Assembly: GCA_904063045.1 (NCBI GenBank)
Contig: CAJFCJ010000003.1
Span: 1,550,001-1,614,000 of the forward strand
Direction of reading: 5' to 3'
From: Dimorphilus gyrociliatus
Taxonomy: Eukaryota > Animalia > Annelida
DNA: 64,000 nt
Position 1 is the stretch's first letter; each line of letters begins with the position of its first letter. The notes below the pieces were generated by a model. The model saw only the letters and a list, made by a program, of their open reading frames with translations. It had not been told where the DNA came from and searched no databases. This document shows positions 3,072 through 13,215 of the stretch, in pieces. The position numbers and the translations under genes were made by a program.

Positions 3072-3871
3072 CTATTTTCTTCTTGCAGGTTTAATAATAG
3101 AGTTGTCATACTTTTTAGCCATTTCTGAAACTAACGTTCTCCTTTCACTTTTCTGCTCTGGCATGTCTGTTTTAGGTTTAGGCATCAACTGCGGGGGCTC
3201 TAATTAAATTTGAAAAGTTACGTTTAATTAATAGAATTGTATAGCATTAAAAATCCGACAAGTTTATCTACTAACCATCTTCACAAATATTTAAATAATC
3301 CGATTCTGTTCTTTTAACGGATCGTCTTGGAGCAGGTTTTGCAGGTGGTTCAACATTTTCATAATCCGTATCTGTGTTGTAGTTCTTATGCAATGGCTCT
3401 CTAGTAGGTGTGTCTTGGGTATATTCTTCATCCGAGTCATTGTCGACGACCGAATATTCGTGATCATCTACGTAGGAGTAGTCTCCATCTTCAGCTAAAT
3501 AAACAATTTAAATTGTACATATTATTGTTGTAAGAAACTTATAAGGAGAAAAAATGGGAAAGCTAGAATAAAAAACAAATTAGTTATAACAAAGCAAACA
3601 TTTTAGATTAATGTTGAAGGTAAGAGGTCATACATGTACTATTTGTGAGGTTGCTCTGCAGTGAAGTAGTTTTTCCAAGTGATGTATGAGACGAAATACG
3701 ATCATAATTTCGATCTGACGCTGGGGTACTTCCTCCTGATTGATTCTGATCATCTTCCGGTATCGGATTGTAAATTGCGCTGGCAAACACAGCGTCCAAA
3801 TCTCTTACTAGGGTACCATAAACGTCATTCTCCTCTTCCGCACCTATTTCCTCCAGCCATTGTTGTTTAGC
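3072..3871 (-). CDS. Last three exons (3871-3634, 3494-3276, 3199-3072) of the Pil1/Lsp1-like gene; acidic, disordered, Tyr-motif-rich tail (194 aa)
   Basis: Canonical GT-AG junctions with matching phases (entry phase 0, then 1, 1) give AKQQWLEEI...VYGTL...DYSYV...EYSVV...DYENVEPPAKPAPRR...DYLNI...KPARRK*, with TAG at 3074-3072. The first of these exons starts at an acceptor with no Met, so it needs an upstream exon. Confidence 0.85.
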
Positions 3872-4750: not shown

Positions 4751-5981
4751 ATGAAACTTTTCGAATATCTGTGCCATTTTCTTATCATTTTTTTTATATT
4801 TTCAACTGGATGTTATACTACTCCCAAAATATATATCTATGAAAATATCTCTTTCGCTACTCCCGTTTCTTATGGTAACACTTCAAATGTAGAATTATAT
4901 GAAACAACACCAACAACCCTTCAAACAAATACAAACTCAACTATATATACTCAATCAAGAACGAAAGCAGATTATATAATTGAATGGGTTGCTATTTCCT
5001 TGGGATCTTTCGGAATTTTTGGCAATGGTTTAGTAATTTTGGCGCTATATCATAAGTCAATAAAAGTACATGAATTGTTAATTATTAATCAAAGTATAAT
5101 CGATATGTCGTGTTCAGCTATGATTATCGTACATTTTACACTTATTATCGGTAAGTTTTTATTTATATTATTATAAAAAATATCCTCAAACTTGAAACAT
5201 ATCTTTTTCTGAAAATGAAGGGAAAAGTTTGCCATTTGCTAATCATACTTGGTGGCTTAATGATATCCAGTGTAAGCTAATAAAGGGAGAGATGTTTCTC
5301 TGGGGTCTTTTCGATATATCAAGTTGTAACTTGTGTGTTGTTACTATCGAACGATACATTGCTGTTATATTTCCTTTGATTCATCATATACACATAACGA
5401 AGTACAGAACCCGAGTAGCTATGGTTTTGGTTTGGATATTAGGGATAGCAACACAGGTTACTGGGGGATCCATTGTCAATAAAATGATAAAGAATAAATG
5501 TGCACTATATTCGAATTTTGTGCCAAGCGGTAGAAAAATATATGGTTTTTTCCTCTTGCTAATCGAATGGACAATACCTGTAACCGTACTGGTTATATGT
5601 AATACTCATATGGCATGGAAAATTCATAAAAGTCGTAAGCTTAATGCGCTAAACGAAGATAAGAAAATATTGGCCAGAAATAACTTGTTTAAAACTTTAC
5701 TACTGGTGGCAATAGGTTTTATTCTTTGTAACAGTTGGAATGCCATTCTATTCTTTTTAATGAACATGGGAGCCAAAATTTACAACAGAAACTTATTCCA
5801 CTCCACAAAAATGATGTATTTAGCTAACGCTATGATAAATCCGTTCGTTTATACTCTTCAATACAACCACTTTAGACGTCGTTTACGCTCTATATTCTGC
5901 TTTGACAGGAAAAAGGAAGTTAAAAATACATGTAGCACATCATTCGCAAGTGATCGTTGTAAAAGTAGTAGTCAAATATAA
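4751..5981 (+). CDS. Orphan class A (rhodopsin-like) GPCR, copy 1; exons 4751-5150 and 5221-5981 (386 aa)
   Basis: GIFGNGLV (TM1), LLIINQSIID (TM2), TIERY (TM3), NPFVY (TM7). Phase-1 intron G|gtaagt...gaag|GG restores a frame that aligns to copy 2. Confidence 0.93.
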
Positions 5982-7766
5982 AATGAATAAGTGTTGAAGA
6001 CATGAAATGTTAAGTAAAATTACTATAAAATGTTAAAAATTTTAGTATATTACATTCTATACTCTCTGTTGTGGATGTTAACCTTATTGGGTCAAATATT
6101 TTGCAGTTGTTGTTTTCGTCAAGATGTTAAAACAAAGCTATACTAAAAGATGATGAACAATATAGCCTCAAACATAACTTACTTAATAGGTAATTTGTTA
6201 AATATGGACAATAGTGTCAACTTGTTAAAACAAGTGATATTTGTTTGTAAAATATTTGTTTACAAACGCTTTTTAAAACTTAATCGACTTACCGGCTCGA
6301 TGAAAGAGTTTAGCAGAAAACATCTCAAGCAAAAGCTTGTGACGTCACACTACTGAGAAACATGAGAAGTAGCCTCATTTGGGAGTAGTTGACTAAAATA
6401 TTACTTATCAATACCTTAATTAGACATTTAATTAGATTTCCTTTCATTGACGCTTTATCATGTTTGTCTCAGTGGGAGAACTCGAATATAGAAATTAATA
6501 ACGGTCAACTAGATTAGTATTGATTTAAGCATTGTTTTTTTGCACTCTTTTTCTTTTCCTTCTTGCCTTTGAATCTCTAATTTAATATCATATAAATTTA
6601 TATCAATTACCAGAGATAGCCGGGATAATTTAAATAAACAAATATATTTAAAAAGTCCTGTTGTCCTAAATGTAGAGCTAGTATTTTAAAAAAGAGGGAA
6701 GCTACCGATAAAAGACTCATCAACTGTAATAATATGATCTGAAATTTAGGTCTTGCAAAGCTATAATTAAACATCCTAAGATGTATTATTTATAGAGAGT
6801 TTAATTACCGTTTGCATTATCTTCAAATAGGCAGATTTTAACAAGTTTAGCTATACCTGTTTAATAAAGGACGATGATAATGTTAAGTTTTATTTAAAAT
6901 CATAGTATATTTGGCTATGCCAATGATTTATCTATTATTGTTAGTTGGATTGCAATGTAATCATTTCCCAAGCTAGTTAAATATTGATAGCAGACAAATG
7001 AAGAAATAAAAAAAAAAGGTGATCTTTCCTAAAAGGATAACTGTCATTCAAAAATTTCCCATTCTCCGCCTCTTCTTTTTCCACTTTTAATATTATGCAT
7101 ATAAAAACTATTGAACTAGCAAGAAAGCTATTGAGCCGTGATTTTATTTTGTAATACGCTTAGATTAGACGTCCTGTGTACTGTTATTTCTATTTAATAA
7201 AACAAACGCATTAAGTTCAAACCTAAATACTTGTTGGGCGTCACTTTATTTGTACATAGTTAATTAGAAATATTAGTCATTCTATTTCCTGGAATAGAAA
7301 CCGTTCTTTCTGCAAAAAAGCGATTATATACGATGACATAATTTTTGCTTGTCAGAGTTTGTTTTAAAAATACATTTGCAAAAAAAAATTAGGATTAGCG
7401 GATCATACTATTGAATTGTAAATATTAAAGAAAACTATTAGTAAATATCCAGAAGCGTTGAATATTAAAATAGAAACGCCTACGCTAGCATAAATTAAAG
7501 AACGCTTTGATGGAACAGTCAGTCATTTCTCTATCCTATTTGAACCAAGTGTTGTGAAGCTGACTAAATGAAAAAAACACAGAATAAAATATGACAAAAA
7601 TTTTTATTTAAAGAATTTATAGAAGCGGATTTATTTTTCTACTAGATGCAACTATAATTTTCTTTAAAGTCTGTTGTTCAATGACAAGAACTATTTTCTT
7701 ATGTTTTCTTTTCTCTCAGTGTTTATTTTATACTCTACGTCAGATTTTAGTATCATAGCTGTCGCT

Positions 7767-8834
7767 ATGAGTTCCACTTCTTTGATTATCAATTCTACGT
7801 ACAACTTTACTTCTCAAATGAAGGAAGAAGACGAGATTACGATGCAAAAAGTATCTCAAAAAATAGCTATAATTTTTGGTAGCTTTGGAATTTTTGGCAA
7901 CGGTCTTGTAATTGTTGCACTGTATCAAAAAGGATTGAAAATCCACGAACTTTTAATCATTAATCAATCAATTGTAGATTTATTATGTTCAGTTTCCATG
8001 ATTGCACATTCTGTGTGGGTTATTGGACAAGATATTGCATATAATCAATTGAACTGGTGGCTGAAGAACTCATACTGCAGATTAATTAAAGGAACTTCAC
8101 TGTTATGGGGTCTTTTTGATGTATCAACATTCAATTTATGTATTGTGACTGTTGAAAGATACGTGGCGATAACTTCTCCTTTATTCCATCACGTACATAT
8201 AACGAAATTCAAAGCTAAGATAGCAATGTTGACGGCTTGGTTCGGTGGTTTGTTAGTACAAATAGTACCAGCCGTCAATGTCAATCAGGTGGTAGGTGAT
8301 AAATGCCTAATCTGGAGACAGTGGAGACTACCAAACGGACGAAAATTACTCGGTAGTTTTCTTTTTGTTACCGAATGGTTGTTACCAGTAACATTACTGG
8401 TTACCTGTAACGCTCATATGGCATGGAAAATTCAGAAAAGTAGGAGATGTAGCCATCAAAGATTTGATATTAAACGTTTAGCAGCAAGAAATAACCTTTT
8501 TCGCACAATGTTATTAGTAGCTATAGGTTTTATTATTTGCAACAGTTGGAACGCATTTTGTTTTTTCTTTACAAATATTGGATCCAAAAATATTCAATAT
8601 TCAAGCAATTACTACCAACTAACAATTGTAGCCTACCTCGCTAATGCTGTAATTAATCCGTTTGTTTACACTTTACAATATACACACTTCAGACGGCGCC
8701 TATTTAATTTAATATTTAAATGTCGAGGCAAGAAATTACGAAATAATGATAGTTCAGCCTTATTTGAAACTGGTAAAGTGATAAAACAAAAACAGAAGCT
8801 TTTAATTAAAAAAAAAAAATTAATGACTTCTTAA
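7767..8834 (+). CDS. Orphan class A GPCR, tandem paralog (copy 2), intronless CDS (355 aa from Met 7767; ORF open from 7674)
   Basis: GIFGNGLV, LLIINQSIVD, TVERY and NPFVYTLQY motifs, collinear with copy 1. N-glycosylation sequons NST and NFT follow Met 7767. Confidence 0.93.
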   Translation: MSSTSLIINSTYNFTSQMKEEDEITMQKVSQKIAIIFGSFGIFGNGLVIVALYQKGLKIHELLIINQSIVDLLCSVSMIAHSVWVIGQDIAYNQLNWWLKNSYCRLIKGTSLLWGLFDVSTFNLCIVTVERYVAITSPLFHHVHITKFKAKIAMLTAWFGGLLVQIVPAVNVNQVVGDKCLIWRQWRLPNGRKLLGSFLFVTEWLLPVTLLVTCNAHMAWKIQKSRRCSHQRFDIKRLAARNNLFRTMLLVAIGFIICNSWNAFCFFFTNIGSKNIQYSSNYYQLTIVAYLANAVINPFVYTLQYTHFRRRLFNLIFKCRGKKLRNNDSSALFETGKVIKQKQKLLIKKKKLMTS

Positions 8835-9968: not shown

Positions 9969-10529
9969 ATGTCCGTAGAGCCGTATATGTGTAAATGGAG
10001 ATCGAATACCATTGAAAATTTCGATAATTTTATGAAAGAATTAGGTATGTTTATATAAATTGAAAAGCAACTCTTTTCAGAATGTTAAGAAAATTTACAT
10101 CTCTATAATTTTTTACTTGAAAACATAGAGGTTGGGTTCTTACTTCGAAAAGCCGGTGGTATGGCAACTACTTATTACCAGCTAAGTTTGAATGGTGATA
10201 CCATCAACTTTAAATACAAGATTGCAACAAAAAAGGGTGACTTATACTTTAAACTAAACGAAGAATTTGACGAAGTCACACCAGATGGCAGAAAAGTAAA
10301 AGTAAGTAAGCGTATAATAAAGTAAAACCTGATATCACTAGTCACTCTGTCGATTCAGTCAACATTCTTTATGGAAGACGGCAAATTTAAGCAAATTCAA
10401 AAAGGAAAGCCTTACGATGCTCATGTTGAAAGGTCTATTACTGAAGATGGTCAACTTTTAGAAATAGCTGTCGCAAATGGTGTTAAATGTACCAGAACTT
10501 ATAAACGTGATGATTCGTTTAATTTATAA
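9969..10529 (+). CDS. FABP: Fatty acid-binding protein (iLBP family); exons 9969-10044, 10129-10301, 10359-10529 (139 aa); missed by the ORF track
   Basis: MSVEPYMCKWRSNTIENFDNFMKELEVGFLLRK...FKLNEEFDEVTPDGRKVKSTF...VERS...VKCTRTYKR. Classic ENFDxFMKxLG, EEFDEVTPDGRK and R-x-Y carboxylate-binding motifs. Canonical introns at the family-typical positions 1 and 2. Confidence 0.95.
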
Positions 10530-10538
10530 AATCAGATA

Positions 10539-12527
10539 ATGGCCTATGTAAGTTTGCCCATAAATACATATCGTGGCTATTTTGAAGCTCTTAGGAACGG
10601 TGATATCAATTCTGTGACAACTTTCTTCGATCAAGCTGAAGTATGTGATTTATAGCTTAAAGATATATAGAATAAATTATAATTTAAAGATATCTTAATA
10701 TTTCTATATATTTTTAATGTATATATCATGTTAATAGGTTAACACTTATGATTTAATCAATGGAAAATTCATAATTCCCAGAAGAAAAGTATCTTTCTTG
10801 ATTGAAAGACCGATTCACGTCGCTGTATCTTCAGGAAATATTGATCTAATAAAGTTATTATGCAGGAATGGCGTAGATATAACGGCAATTGGGAGCAACG
10901 ATGATAATACCCTTCATATTATAGCTCTTATTAGTTCAAGAAATCAAAATAATGAGCAAATGTTTATTAATGTTTATAACTATTTATTACAAGAATTTGA
11001 TATTGCAATACTTGCAAAATTGTTTATGAGCGAAAACAAACAAGGTCTTCGCCCAGTAGAGTTAGCAGCCAAAGTTGGAGCCTATAAAGTACTTTTAAGA
11101 TTTTTCGAAACTAACGGTGTTTATAGGAAATCCTGTAAATTTCTGGGATATTATCAAGAAATACTCTACGATATAACAGATTATGAAACGACAAGGAAAA
11201 CGATTTATTACTTAAGCTTAATAATTAAAAAAGTCTAGTTTATTTTTGATATAATTGATAATTTGAAACATAAACATAAATCGTCTTCCAGAGTCGACAA
11301 AAGTCCTCTCAATGACATAACAAAAGTAACTATGTATGAACTCAACAACACTGCCTTCATATCTATGATAAACTCTCCATTTTTTTCAAAATGGATTTCT
11401 GCAAGTGTAACTAACATCTATTTGCTTTTCATACATCTTATGTATAGGGTAATTTACATGACTCTTCTTGTTTTAGTAGACCCTTTTACTTTTCGATTAG
11501 AAGCAAATTTGGGAAATTCTACCAATGATAACTGTTCTAAATATGTACAGGGTTTCATAACCCCGCAGTTGCGTAAAGCGTTACGTTTCACATTTCTTGT
11601 GTTTAACTTACTTATTTTATTATGGAAAATAAGCTGGTTTCTCAGCAAATTAATTCAAAAGAAGCGAGTTCGTGTTAAACACTATCAAAAGTTGAGAATA
11701 GCAAAAGCATCACAACTTGTTCTTCAAAATGATCAGGAATACGATTTTAAATAATTCATATGTAAAATATAATTAATTTTTCATATTTTGTAAATAGTAC
11801 TCTGGTATAAAAATATATTAAATGATTTCTATAAAACACATTCAATGGCTTATTAAGAATGGTTTAAAATCGTATTTAGATCATATACTCTTTTTATGAC
11901 GTAACATTGATTCTTTGTTCAACAATTTTTGAGGTAATGCTACTATCTCACTCTAACGTCGATGGAGCTGATATAATATACTTGGCATCTTATATTTCTG
12001 CTGTCTGGGTGATGCAATCGTATTTGCAGACGATTAAATTTTTTGGAGATCATATAATAATGATGAACAGACTTTTAACAGACGCCCTCAAATTTATACT
12101 CGTGGCTGTATTAATCTTTTCAGGCTTTAATCTCATACTATTCAAAACAAGTACAATCTACGGCGATTGTCAAAATATTTTCATTGTCAGCTTCTCATCT
12201 GCTTTTTATCACCTCTTACAATTGATGCTAAATCTAGTAAACGTTGACGAACTAGCACTATCGAAAACAAGTGGATTTCAGCTTGTACATGGACTATTTG
12301 TTGTAACAGTGTCAATCATATTGGTTAATTATCTTATAGCAATTATGTCAAATAATATAGCGTCGATTAGTGGCGAAAAAGACGAAGTTATGACCCTACA
12401 TCGTCTATCATACAGTCAGTGGATGAAAGGAAGCATATATACGTATTTTCTCAAAAAATGGATTCCTCTAAACAGGAAGTATATTAAAAGTGAAAATAGA
12501 ATATATATTTCGTGTTTAGAATATTAG
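10539..12527 (+). CDS. Ankyrin-repeat TRPV-like cation channel; proposed exons 10539-10640, 10738-11195, 11292-11736, 11880-12527 (550 aa)
   Basis: Ankyrin repeats (PIHVAVSSGNIDLIKLL, NTLHIIAL, GLRPVELAAKVGA), a YDITDYE linker, 6 hydrophobic segments, pore helix FSSAFYHLLQLMLN and TM6 NYLIAIMSN. Intron 1 is canonical; introns 2 and 3 appear to need GA donors. Confidence 0.85.
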
Positions 12528-13215
12528 ATATCCACTTTGAAGGGGAATGATGGAGAAATTGATGGAGACAATTAAATAATAATGAAAATATCTAAACTAA
12601 AACGTTTTTCTTTTATGCTTAGCATCATTTAATGAATTATTTAATGATATTGAATTCTGTTTTCTTTTACTTTTCTGCTCCTTTCCATTATGGATTCTTA
12701 TATTACATTTATTAATCATAGTTTCAGAAATAAATCCCTACTTCTTTAGAGGATATTTATATAAACGTCTGAAGTATTCAATTTGGCTTCGCTTGAGTTT
12801 TTATCATAGCAATTCACCAGAATTTAAAAAATTTCTTTTTTTTTTGTCTACAGGTAAATTGTTTGATCTTCATGAACTAAAAGTATAGTTAAAGCTTTGG
12901 TCTTCGATAGGATATAACAATGATTAAGACTTAAAAAGTAATTTGAAATAATAACACAAACTTAGACGATAAACTATTTCCTAGCATGAACAATTTCAAA
13001 GGTAATAAATAATTCGTAAAGTAAGATATTGATAGGTTTAATTAATTGCGAATAATAAAATAATAAAAACTGTGTACGTAGACACTTCCGCTCACTTACA
13101 TACGGTATATTCAATATAGTAAAATAGCTTTAGCTATTATTTTTATGACTCAGTGAAAAGAAATCATGATTATTTCAATGACTAATTACAATAAATAATA
13201 AATTGATTTGCTAAC

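What the first reader, a model, noticed from the sequence alone, without database searches (positions are those of the whole stretch)
10359..10737. FABP stop codon and TRPV start codon are only 9 nt apart: dicistronic, trans-spliced or chimeric unit
FABP ends with TAA at 10527-10529 and the TRPV frame starts with ATG at 10539 (TAA aatcagata ATG), leaving no room for a FABP 3' UTR or a separate promoter. The spacer holds a CAG acceptor (10533-10535) 3 nt before the ATG, in phase 0. It could act as a spliced-leader acceptor as in operons, or accept the phase-0 FABP exon-2 donor (10301) to give an in-frame FABP(1-83)-TRPV chimera. The first AATAAA after the FABP stop (10671-10676) lies inside TRPV intron 1, so intronic polyadenylation versus splicing could switch between FABP-only and read-through mRNA.
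Basis: partly seen in the sequence, partly recalled or inferred. Interest (0 to 1): 0.75.

Follow-up and report, generated by a model that had tools for sequence, protein, structure and literature searches.

The report
FABP and TRP-like genes share an exon
A fatty-acid-binding-protein gene stops 9 bases before a TRP-like ion-channel gene starts, RNA assemblies show both ends on one shared exon, and a related worm keeps the layout; there is no sign of trans-splicing or a fusion protein, and whether a single mRNA carries both genes is still open.

Summary
A three-exon FABP gene ends at TAA 10527-29. ATG 10539 opens a 550-aa ankyrin/TRP-like channel gene, 9 nt later and in the same frame.

RNA evidence:
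- A transcriptome contig confirms every predicted intron.
- It runs unbroken from 10359 to 10640, so the FABP last exon and the channel's first coding exon are one transcribed exon.
- It shows no 10301>10536 junction, no foreign leader at 10536, and no coverage of intron 10641-10737.

An orthologous locus in a diverged relative (L001; about half of synonymous codons differ) keeps TAA, a 9-nt spacer and ATG in frame. The spacer's CAG is ACC there, and the intronic AATAAA is absent.

An earlier scan note, which I did not verify, names the genome Dimorphilus gyrociliatus. Its genome paper reports no spliced leaders or operons (PMC7854359).

The operon and chimera readings are therefore not supported. 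Overlapping or read-through transcription is supported. Contigs cannot separate a true dicistronic mRNA from an internal channel TSS. I lean slightly towards read-through with alternative polyadenylation and low-efficiency reinitiation. CAGE or long-read cDNA would decide.

The scan's first readers flagged other dicistronic candidates in this genome. None has been followed up.

The parts
9969..10044 (+). FABP exon 1 (ATG 9969; phase-1 donor GTATGT at 10045)
   Evidence: Read directly. RNA joint 10041/10126 with cut +3 gives 10044/10129.
10129..10301 (+). FABP exon 2 (donor AAA|GTAAGT)
   Evidence: Matches FABP4 residues 25-81, E 3.8e-10. RNA joint 10301/10359 is seen in two runs.
10359..10640 (+). 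Shared transcribed exon: FABP exon 3 coding part, spacer and the channel's first coding exon
   Evidence: One RNA contig piece lies unbroken on 10359-10640, between joints 10301/10359 and 10640/10738.
10527..10529 (+). FABP stop codon TAA, followed by A
   Evidence: Conserved in the relative.
10530..10538 (+). 9-nt spacer aatcagata with CAG at 10533-35
   Evidence: The relative has aatacccta: same length, 4 of 9 bases differ, CAG lost.
10510..10539 (+). 9-codon upstream ORF in the +1 frame, whose TAA (10537-39) overlaps the channel ATG (UAAUG)
   Evidence: The same ATG, length and TAATGGC are present in the relative. It may be a by-product of FABP coding.
10539..10640 (+). Channel start codon and first 34 codons
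   Evidence: The ORF is open in both species, 47% aa identity, no indels. It is spliced to exon 2.
10559..10568 (+). Poly(A)-signal-like hexamers CATAAA and AATACA, 32-36 nt after the FABP stop
   Evidence: The relative has TATAAA and AATAAA at the same offset. Function is inferred only.
10641..10737 (+). Channel intron 1 (GT-AG, 97 nt) holding AATAAA at 10671-76
   Evidence: RNA joint 10640/10738 and no contig coverage of the intron. AATAAA located; it is not conserved.
10738..11195 (+). Channel exon 2 (ankyrin repeats)
   Evidence: Pfam Ank_3 at E 4e-6. The RNA contig ends at 11195.
11196..11291 (+). Channel intron 2, GA-AG, partly retained
   Evidence: Joint 11193/11290 with both=2, plus an unspliced contig 11166-11319. 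The donor is conserved in the relative.
11292..11736 (+). Channel exon 3
   Evidence: RNA contig 11290-11734. The frame is kept.
11737..11879 (+). Channel intron 3, GA-AG
   Evidence: Joint 11734/11878 with both=2. The donor is conserved.
11880..12527 (+). Channel exon 4 (TM5-pore-TM6, stop TAG 12525-27); the RNA continues to about 13001
   Evidence: Pfam Ion_trans, weak. PDB hits to TRPC6 and TRPV3 at about 4e-5. RNA contig runs to 13001.

Best explanation
FABP and the ankyrin/TRP-like channel are two separate protein-coding genes. They are fixed head-to-tail so closely that they share one transcribed exon (10359-10640). The FABP 3' UTR is channel coding sequence, and the channel's 5' leader is FABP sequence.

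The mechanism I think most likely has three steps.
1. Transcription from the FABP promoter runs into the channel gene.
2. Cleavage at a proximal poly(A) signal gives the FABP mRNA. The candidates are the NATAAA-type hexamers 32-36 nt after the stop, or the intron-1 AATAAA.
3. Read-through plus splicing of 10641-10737 and the two GA-AG introns gives a dicistronic FABP-channel mRNA.

The channel would then be translated at low efficiency. Ribosomes that end at the FABP TAA (9 nt upstream), or at the +1-frame upstream ORF whose TAA overlaps the ATG, would reinitiate at ATG 10539.

Shown: the exon structure, the shared exon, the absence of a leader or chimeric junction in the contigs, and conservation of the layout.
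Inferred: a single molecule carrying both ORFs, the poly(A) choice, and reinitiation.
For: - One RNA contig passes FABP exons 1-3, the stop, the spacer, the ATG and channel exons 1-2 with all introns removed.
- Nine nt leave no room for a promoter or a UTR.
- The layout (TAA, 9 nt, ATG, same frame, invariant TAATGGC) is kept in a relative in which about half of synonymous codons differ.
- Other same-strand neighbours in the same host intron lie 1.1-1.7 kb apart in both species, so general compaction does not force the tight link.
- Every upstream AUG in exon 3 has its ORF closed at or before 10539.
- The stop-to-start distance is under 20 nt, as in known reinitiation after long ORFs (PMC10275272).
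- PAS-like hexamers sit at the same offset after the stop in both species.
- The 550-aa model starting at ATG 10539 fits family length: 560-660 aa, with the first ankyrin about 45-60 residues in.
Against: - Contigs of short reads cannot show that one molecule carries both ORFs.
- The same contig also bridges 1.1-1.7-kb intergenic stretches to two upstream GPCR genes. All four genes lie in a 9.3-kb intron of a well-expressed minus-strand gene, whose pre-mRNA could supply bridging reads.
- No TURBS-like motif or stable structure lies upstream of the stop (z +1.54), and there is no Rfam hit.
- There is no excess synonymous conservation at the FABP 3' end.
- TAA followed by A is a strong terminator, and reinitiation after a 139-codon ORF is normally poor.
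- The purine at -3 of the ATG is not conserved (A versus C).
- Conservation of the spacer length is not significant.
- The genome paper describes canonical promoters and no operons.
Confidence: 0.42

Rival explanations
1. Overlapping but separate transcription units. The channel has its own TSS inside the FABP gene (intron 2, exon 3 or the last about 26 nt before the ATG). FABP mRNAs end inside channel exon 1 or intron 1. The two mRNAs merely overlap and may be made in different cells.
For: - Monocistronic mRNAs are the rule in animals, and the genome paper reports canonical promoter and CAGE profiles with no operons.
- The contig evidence fits overlap just as well.
- A rough depth calculation on the 6681-nt contig suggests FABP is several-fold more abundant than the channel's 5' part if the GPCR and intergenic parts are low (inference).
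- TATA-like strings exist at 10312, 10500 and 10525.
Against: - None of the TATA-like strings is conserved in the relative.
- Any TSS upstream of 10513 puts 1-7 AUGs in the leader.
- No conserved non-coding block marks a promoter.
- Starts cannot be seen in contigs.
Confidence: 0.38
2. A spliced-leader operon. The CAG at 10533-35 accepts a trans-spliced leader, so the channel gets its own capped mRNA from a polycistronic precursor.
For: The genes are closely spaced on the same strand. A CAG lies 3 nt before the ATG and is as good as local acceptors.
Against: - No loose (foreign) letters appear at 10536 in RNA contigs; the contig reads straight through.
- The CAG is ACC in the relative.
- PMC7854359 found no over-represented 5' leader and concludes that the presumed species has no trans-splicing or operons.
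Confidence: 0.03
3. A chimeric protein, made either by splicing FABP exon 2 (donor 10301) to an acceptor at 10536, or by read-through of the in-frame TAA to give a FABP-channel fusion.
For: Both junctions would be in frame. The FABP frame and the channel frame are the same, with a single stop between them.
Against: - No 10301>10536 joint is seen in either run.
- The acceptor is not conserved.
- TAA-A is not a read-through context (established knowledge).
- FABP ends at its natural C-terminus relative to solved FABPs.
- The channel N-terminus fits family length without an added domain.
Confidence: 0.04
4. ATG 10539 is not the real channel start. The true 5' exons would lie elsewhere, or the 10539-10640 exon would be UTR.
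For: The first exon is the least conserved part (47% aa identity) and has no Pfam hit.
Against: - The ORF and ATG are conserved without indels or stops.
- The exon is spliced in frame to exon 2.
- No other joint enters the exon.
- No further channel-like exons exist in the window.
- The next in-frame ATG is not positionally conserved.
Confidence: 0.05

Closest known systems
Dicistronic genes of Drosophila (e.g. stoned A/B, Adh/Adhr) and mammals (SNURF-SNRPN, CERS1-GDF1); recalled from my own knowledge
   Same: Two unrelated, non-overlapping ORFs on one strand with a very short spacer, no spliced leader, and an arrangement conserved between species.
   Different: A single mature mRNA has not been shown here. 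The spacer (9 nt, in frame) is shorter than most. The upstream ORF's stop is followed by three exon junctions. The host is an annelid reported to lack operons.
SL1-type or SL2 operons of nematodes and operons of Oikopleura (cited in PMC7854359)
   Same: Same-strand genes with almost no intercistronic DNA in a compact genome.
   Different: No spliced leader is seen, the acceptor is not conserved, and the species is reported to lack trans-splicing.
Termination-reinitiation after long ORFs (calicivirus and influenza B TURBS; review PMC10275272)
   Same: Stop and restart codons lie within 20 nt, and a UAAUG overlap exists for a +1-frame upstream ORF.
   Different: No TURBS motif or upstream structure was found. 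This is a cellular gene pair, and reinitiation has not been shown.
Read-through or overlapping tandem transcripts of compacted genomes (microsporidia, nucleomorphs); recalled from my own knowledge
   Same: UTRs lie in neighbouring genes, and contigs span several genes.
   Different: Here the neighbouring spacers are 1.1-1.7 kb, so the overlap is specific to this pair.
FABP5-TRPV1 functional link in mammals (PMC9163147)
   Same: A lipid chaperone paired with a lipid-sensitive TRP channel, which gives a reason for co-expression.
   Different: The mammalian genes are unlinked. The channel here is not demonstrably a TRPV, and no functional data exist.

Membership tests
Spliced-leader operon | The downstream mRNA carries a trans-spliced leader at an acceptor just upstream of its ATG | tested here: not met
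   The RNA contig reads through 10530-38, with no loose end at 10536. Contigs can drop rare forms.
Spliced-leader operon | The acceptor site is conserved | tested here: not met
   CAG in the window is ACC in the relative.
Spliced-leader operon | The organism has SL RNA and trans-splicing | not testable with these tools
   PMC7854359 reports none. The species identity comes from an earlier scan note and was not verified here.
Dicistronic mRNA (Drosophila type) | Two complete non-overlapping ORFs on one strand with a short spacer | tested here: met
   A 139-aa and a 550-aa ORF, 9 nt apart.
Dicistronic mRNA (Drosophila type) | One mature capped and polyadenylated molecule carries both ORFs | tested here: inconclusive
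   A contig spans both with introns removed, but a contig is not a molecule. Raw or long reads were not available.
Dicistronic mRNA (Drosophila type) | The arrangement is conserved in relatives | tested here: met
   L001 has the same order, stop, 9 nt and ATG. Only one relative was available.
Dicistronic mRNA (Drosophila type) | The downstream ORF is translated from that mRNA | not testable with these tools
   This needs ribosome profiling or reporters.
TURBS-type termination-reinitiation | Stop and restart codon within about 20 nt | tested here: met
   9 nt for the FABP frame, and a UAAUG overlap for the +1-frame upstream ORF.
TURBS-type termination-reinitiation | An upstream structured element with an 18S-complementary motif | tested here: not met
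   No conserved UGGGA by reading. The fold z-score is +1.54. No Rfam hit.
FABP / intracellular lipid-binding protein | Sequence similarity over the beta-barrel, length about 130-140 aa | tested here: met
   Exon 2 matches FABP4 residues 25-81 at E 3.8e-10. Exon 3 is collinear with residues 86-134 at E about 0.01-0.04. The model is 139 aa. Pfam on single exons gave nothing.
TRPV subfamily | Six N-terminal ankyrin repeats | tested here: not met
   Pfam scores only one ankyrin repeat clearly, and about 190 aa precede the membrane part.
TRPV subfamily | The closest relatives are TRPV rather than other TRP channels | tested here: not met
   TRPC6 at 3.9e-5, TRPV3 at 7e-5 and Inactive at 1e-3 are all weak. 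Family members hit Ion_trans or PKD_channel.
TRP-like 6-TM cation channel (superfamily) | TM5-pore-TM6 similarity | tested here: met
   173 library proteins at E<=1e-3, mostly about 560-660 aa.

The most novel reading that the evidence does not exclude
A conserved cellular dicistron in an animal without trans-splicing. One FABP-promoter transcript would encode an abundant lipid chaperone and, by termination-reinitiation 9 nt after a 139-codon ORF, a scarce lipid-gated TRP-like channel. Poly(A)-site choice inside the channel's first exon or intron would set the ratio. This would be a cellular case of reinitiation after a long ORF, and an exception to the published 'no operons' description of this genome.
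Probability: 0.2. Interest if true: 0.75.

Novelty: new member of a known kind. Interest (0 to 1): 0.5.

Why it matters
The genome paper of the presumed species uses the absence of operons and trans-splicing to argue that compaction left gene regulation canonical. This gene pair has no promoter or UTR space of its own, and the layout is kept in a diverged relative while its neighbours sit more than 1 kb apart. That makes it a concrete locus for testing the claim.

If one mRNA carries both ORFs, it would be a rare cellular example of translating a second long ORF right after a first one, which the reinitiation field still lacks (PMC10275272). It would also tie a lipid chaperone to a TRP-like channel, echoing the FABP5-TRPV1 link in mammals.

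If instead the channel has an internal TSS, the pair is an ordinary overlap of tandem genes in a compact genome.

Tried and rejected
- Word-index protein search with channel exon 2 found nothing, because the length filter shuts out full-length kin.
- Exact-product look-ups for the upstream intronless GPCR with two start choices found nothing. A homology search with it found only the relative. The window's own species is therefore not visible in the protein collection, and I could not see its official gene models.
- A second GPCR hit (P0152) was a paralogue at another locus and gave no information.
- Two family members of the channel from other animals are intronless, one of them in a tandem array. 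Neither has an FABP next door, so the adjacency is not a family trait.
- The window holds no further channel or FABP paralogues or extra 5' exons.
- The bacterial-type promoter scan was uninformative.
- There is no Rfam family and no stable fold at the junction.
- TATA-like strings in FABP intron 2 and around the stop were rejected as promoter evidence because none is conserved.
- The GTAAGT inside codons 3-5 of the channel was rejected as a donor. It is not used in RNA and not conserved.
- A literature search for the run accessions of the relative found nothing.
- Searches with the joined (spliced) FABP and channel proteins were not made, because no reference exists for them. Exons were searched one by one. 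A local script joined the exons only to count length and stops.

Full report
**What is in the sequence.**
Reading the window gives a three-exon gene on the + strand.
- ATG is at 9969.
- The exons are 9969-10044, 10129-10301 and 10359-10529.
- The donors are GTATGT and GTAAGT, and the stop is TAA at 10527-29.
- The product is 139 aa.

Nine bases later (aatcagata) ATG 10539 opens 34 codons up to a GTATGT donor at 10641. The frame continues at 10738 and runs through four exons to TAG 12525-27, giving 550 aa. The FABP stop and the channel ATG are in the same frame, so a single stop separates the two ORFs. The first AATAAA on the + strand after the stop is at 10671-76, inside the channel's first intron.

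**What the two genes are.**
- FABP exon 2 matches solved adipocyte, heart and myelin-P2 FABPs over residues 25-81 (E 3.8e-10).
- FABP exon 3 is collinear with residues 86-134 (weak). The upstream gene is therefore an FABP that ends at its natural C-terminus.
- The downstream gene has ankyrin repeats in exon 2 (Pfam).
- Exon 4 holds a TM5-pore-TM6 region that hits TRPC6 and TRPV3 about equally weakly (about 4-7e-5).
- An exhaustive profile search with exon 4 found 173 relatives, mostly 560-660 aa at 22-32% identity.
- Sampled family members carry Ion_trans, PKD_channel or Ank hits.

I therefore call it an ankyrin/TRP-like channel. 'TRPV' is not established. The 550-aa model starting at ATG 10539 fits family length, and the first detectable ankyrin repeat lies at a similar distance from the N-terminus as in a family member. 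No N-terminal domain seems to be missing. No further channel-like exons exist in the window.

**RNA evidence.**
Only two public runs were offered, both as assembled contigs.

Run X2 behaves as a transcriptome. One 6681-nt contig does the following:
- It runs from about 4.5 kb upstream of 8800, through the FABP 5' region.
- It skips 10045-10128 and 10302-10358.
- It lies unbroken on 10359-10640, skips 10641-10737 and ends at 11195.

Further contigs carry the channel on to about 13001. This settles four points.
- (i) All predicted introns are real.
- (ii) 10539-10640 belongs to the channel mRNA.
- (iii) The FABP last exon and the channel's first coding exon are one transcribed exon.
- (iv) There is no 10301>10536 junction and no foreign leader at 10536. 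The depth arithmetic also shows no contig coverage of intron 10641-10737.

The limits are equally clear. Contigs show neither starts nor ends, nor single molecules. They drop rare variants, and a short poly(A) tip would be clipped by the assembler (my knowledge of such assemblers).

The same contig also bridges the 1.1-1.7-kb spacers to two upstream GPCR genes. A loose end at 13215 matches the letters just before 3871. All four + strand genes therefore sit in a 9.3-kb intron of a well-expressed minus-strand gene. In an unstranded assembly that gene's pre-mRNA could supply bridging reads. Continuity across the 9-nt spacer is thus expected under any model in which either mRNA has a UTR.

**Comparative evidence.**
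The best library hit (P0001, 83% identity) led to a 131-kb genomic contig of an unnamed relative (L001). It has the same gene order: GPCR, GPCR, FABP, channel.
- Protein identity per exon is 76, 86 and 91% for FABP and 52, 58, 58 and 83% for the channel.
- Only about half of the codons for conserved residues are identical, so neutral sites are well diverged.
- In the alignment the relative reads TAA aatacccta ATG. It has the same stop, the same 9-nt length, the same frame and an invariant TAATGGC.
- Four of the nine spacer bases differ, an identity like that of the introns.
- The CAG 'acceptor' is ACC.
- The GTAAGT inside channel codons 3-5 is lost.
- The relative's intron 1 has no AATAAA.

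Two things are shared. The first is NATAAA-type hexamers 31-36 nt after the FABP stop, although these overlap conserved Ile-Asn codons. The second is a 9-codon +1-frame upstream ORF whose TAA overlaps the channel ATG, which may be a by-product of FABP's Asp-Asp codons.

The length conservation of the spacer is not significant by itself: there are 9 indel events in about 303 non-coding bases, so the chance of none in 9 nt is about 0.77. The contrast with the neighbours is more telling. In both species the other same-strand genes of this nest lie 1.1-1.7 kb apart, so general compaction does not force the 9-nt link. Channel relatives from other animals are intronless, sometimes in tandem arrays, and have no FABP next door.

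**The species and the literature.**
An earlier follow-up note of this scan names the genome Dimorphilus gyrociliatus. I could not verify this, because the window's own proteins are not visible in the collections. The low G+C and the very short introns fit. The genome paper states that no over-represented 5' leader exists and that ATAC and CAGE profiles are canonical. It concludes that operons and trans-splicing do not occur (PMC7854359).

**Interpretation.**
- The spliced-leader reading fails three tests: no leader in RNA contigs, an acceptor that is not conserved, and a species reported to lack leaders.
- The chimera reading has no junction support and no conserved acceptor.
- Stop-codon read-through is unlikely at TAA-A (established knowledge), and FABP ends where FABPs end.
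- A gene pair that must overlap in its transcripts remains.

Either of two things is true. (A) Read-through from the FABP promoter gives a dicistronic mRNA, with a proximal poly(A) site producing FABP-only mRNA. (B) The channel has a TSS inside FABP.

Under (A), and under (B) unless the TSS lies within the last about 26 nt, the channel AUG is preceded by AUGs whose ORFs all close at or before 10539. Reinitiation is therefore the likely way to the channel AUG. The stop-start distance fits the under-20-nt rule known for reinitiation after long ORFs (PMC10275272). However, no TURBS-like motif, stable fold, Rfam element or excess synonymous conservation is present.

I lean slightly to (A), at 0.42 against 0.38, for two reasons: no promoter-like element is conserved inside FABP, and the tight link is specific to this pair. 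The data in hand cannot decide. A functional reason for co-expression exists by analogy, since FABP5 modulates TRPV1 signalling in mammals (PMC9163147), but it is speculative here.

**Verdict.**
A shared exon with overlapping or dicistronic transcription stays open; the operon and chimera readings do not hold.
- It is a new member of a known kind (tandem overlapping or dicistronic gene pairs).
- It is of moderate interest because it sits in a genome described as free of operon-like units, and because CAGE and long-read data that already exist for the presumed species could settle it quickly.

The joined spliced proteins were not sent to any search.

Noticed in passing
window 11196-11291 and 11737-11879; L001 about 9260 and 9836: Both later channel introns are GA-AG. 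RNA joints confirm this (both=2 shifts give GA..AG). Their extended donors are nearly identical (AAG|GAAAACGATTT and CAG|GAATACGATTT). Both GA donors are conserved in the relative. Intron 2 is also present unspliced, at about a third of local depth.
   Followed up: partly
L001 8700-8805 versus window 10641-10737: In the relative, the donor aligned to the window's GAA|GTATGT is CGA|GAACGT. Only a GA donor keeps the frame there, so the same intron appears to be GT-AG in one species and GA-AG in the other. No RNA is available for the relative.
   Followed up: partly
window 3845-3871 and 13215: The loose end of an RNA contig at 13215 equals the letters just before 3871. The 9.3-kb intron of the minus-strand host gene is therefore real, and it holds four + strand genes: two GPCRs, FABP and the channel.
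   Followed up: partly
window 10002-10487 and 11801-11938: A coral metatranscriptome run (X1) holds a correctly spliced FABP fragment at 99+% likeness and an unspliced channel fragment. This worm or a very close strain therefore lives in that coral sample.
   Followed up: no
L007 3589-13791: In another, unidentified animal, five channel relatives of about 600 aa lie in a same-strand tandem array and are intronless. The window's copy has three introns at apparently new positions.
   Followed up: no
window 4751-5981 and 7674-8834: Two paralogous 7TM receptor genes lie upstream. The nearest named hit is a somatostatin-receptor-like protein at 26% identity. They are conserved in order in the relative, and a third paralogue lies elsewhere in the relative's genome.
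   Followed up: no
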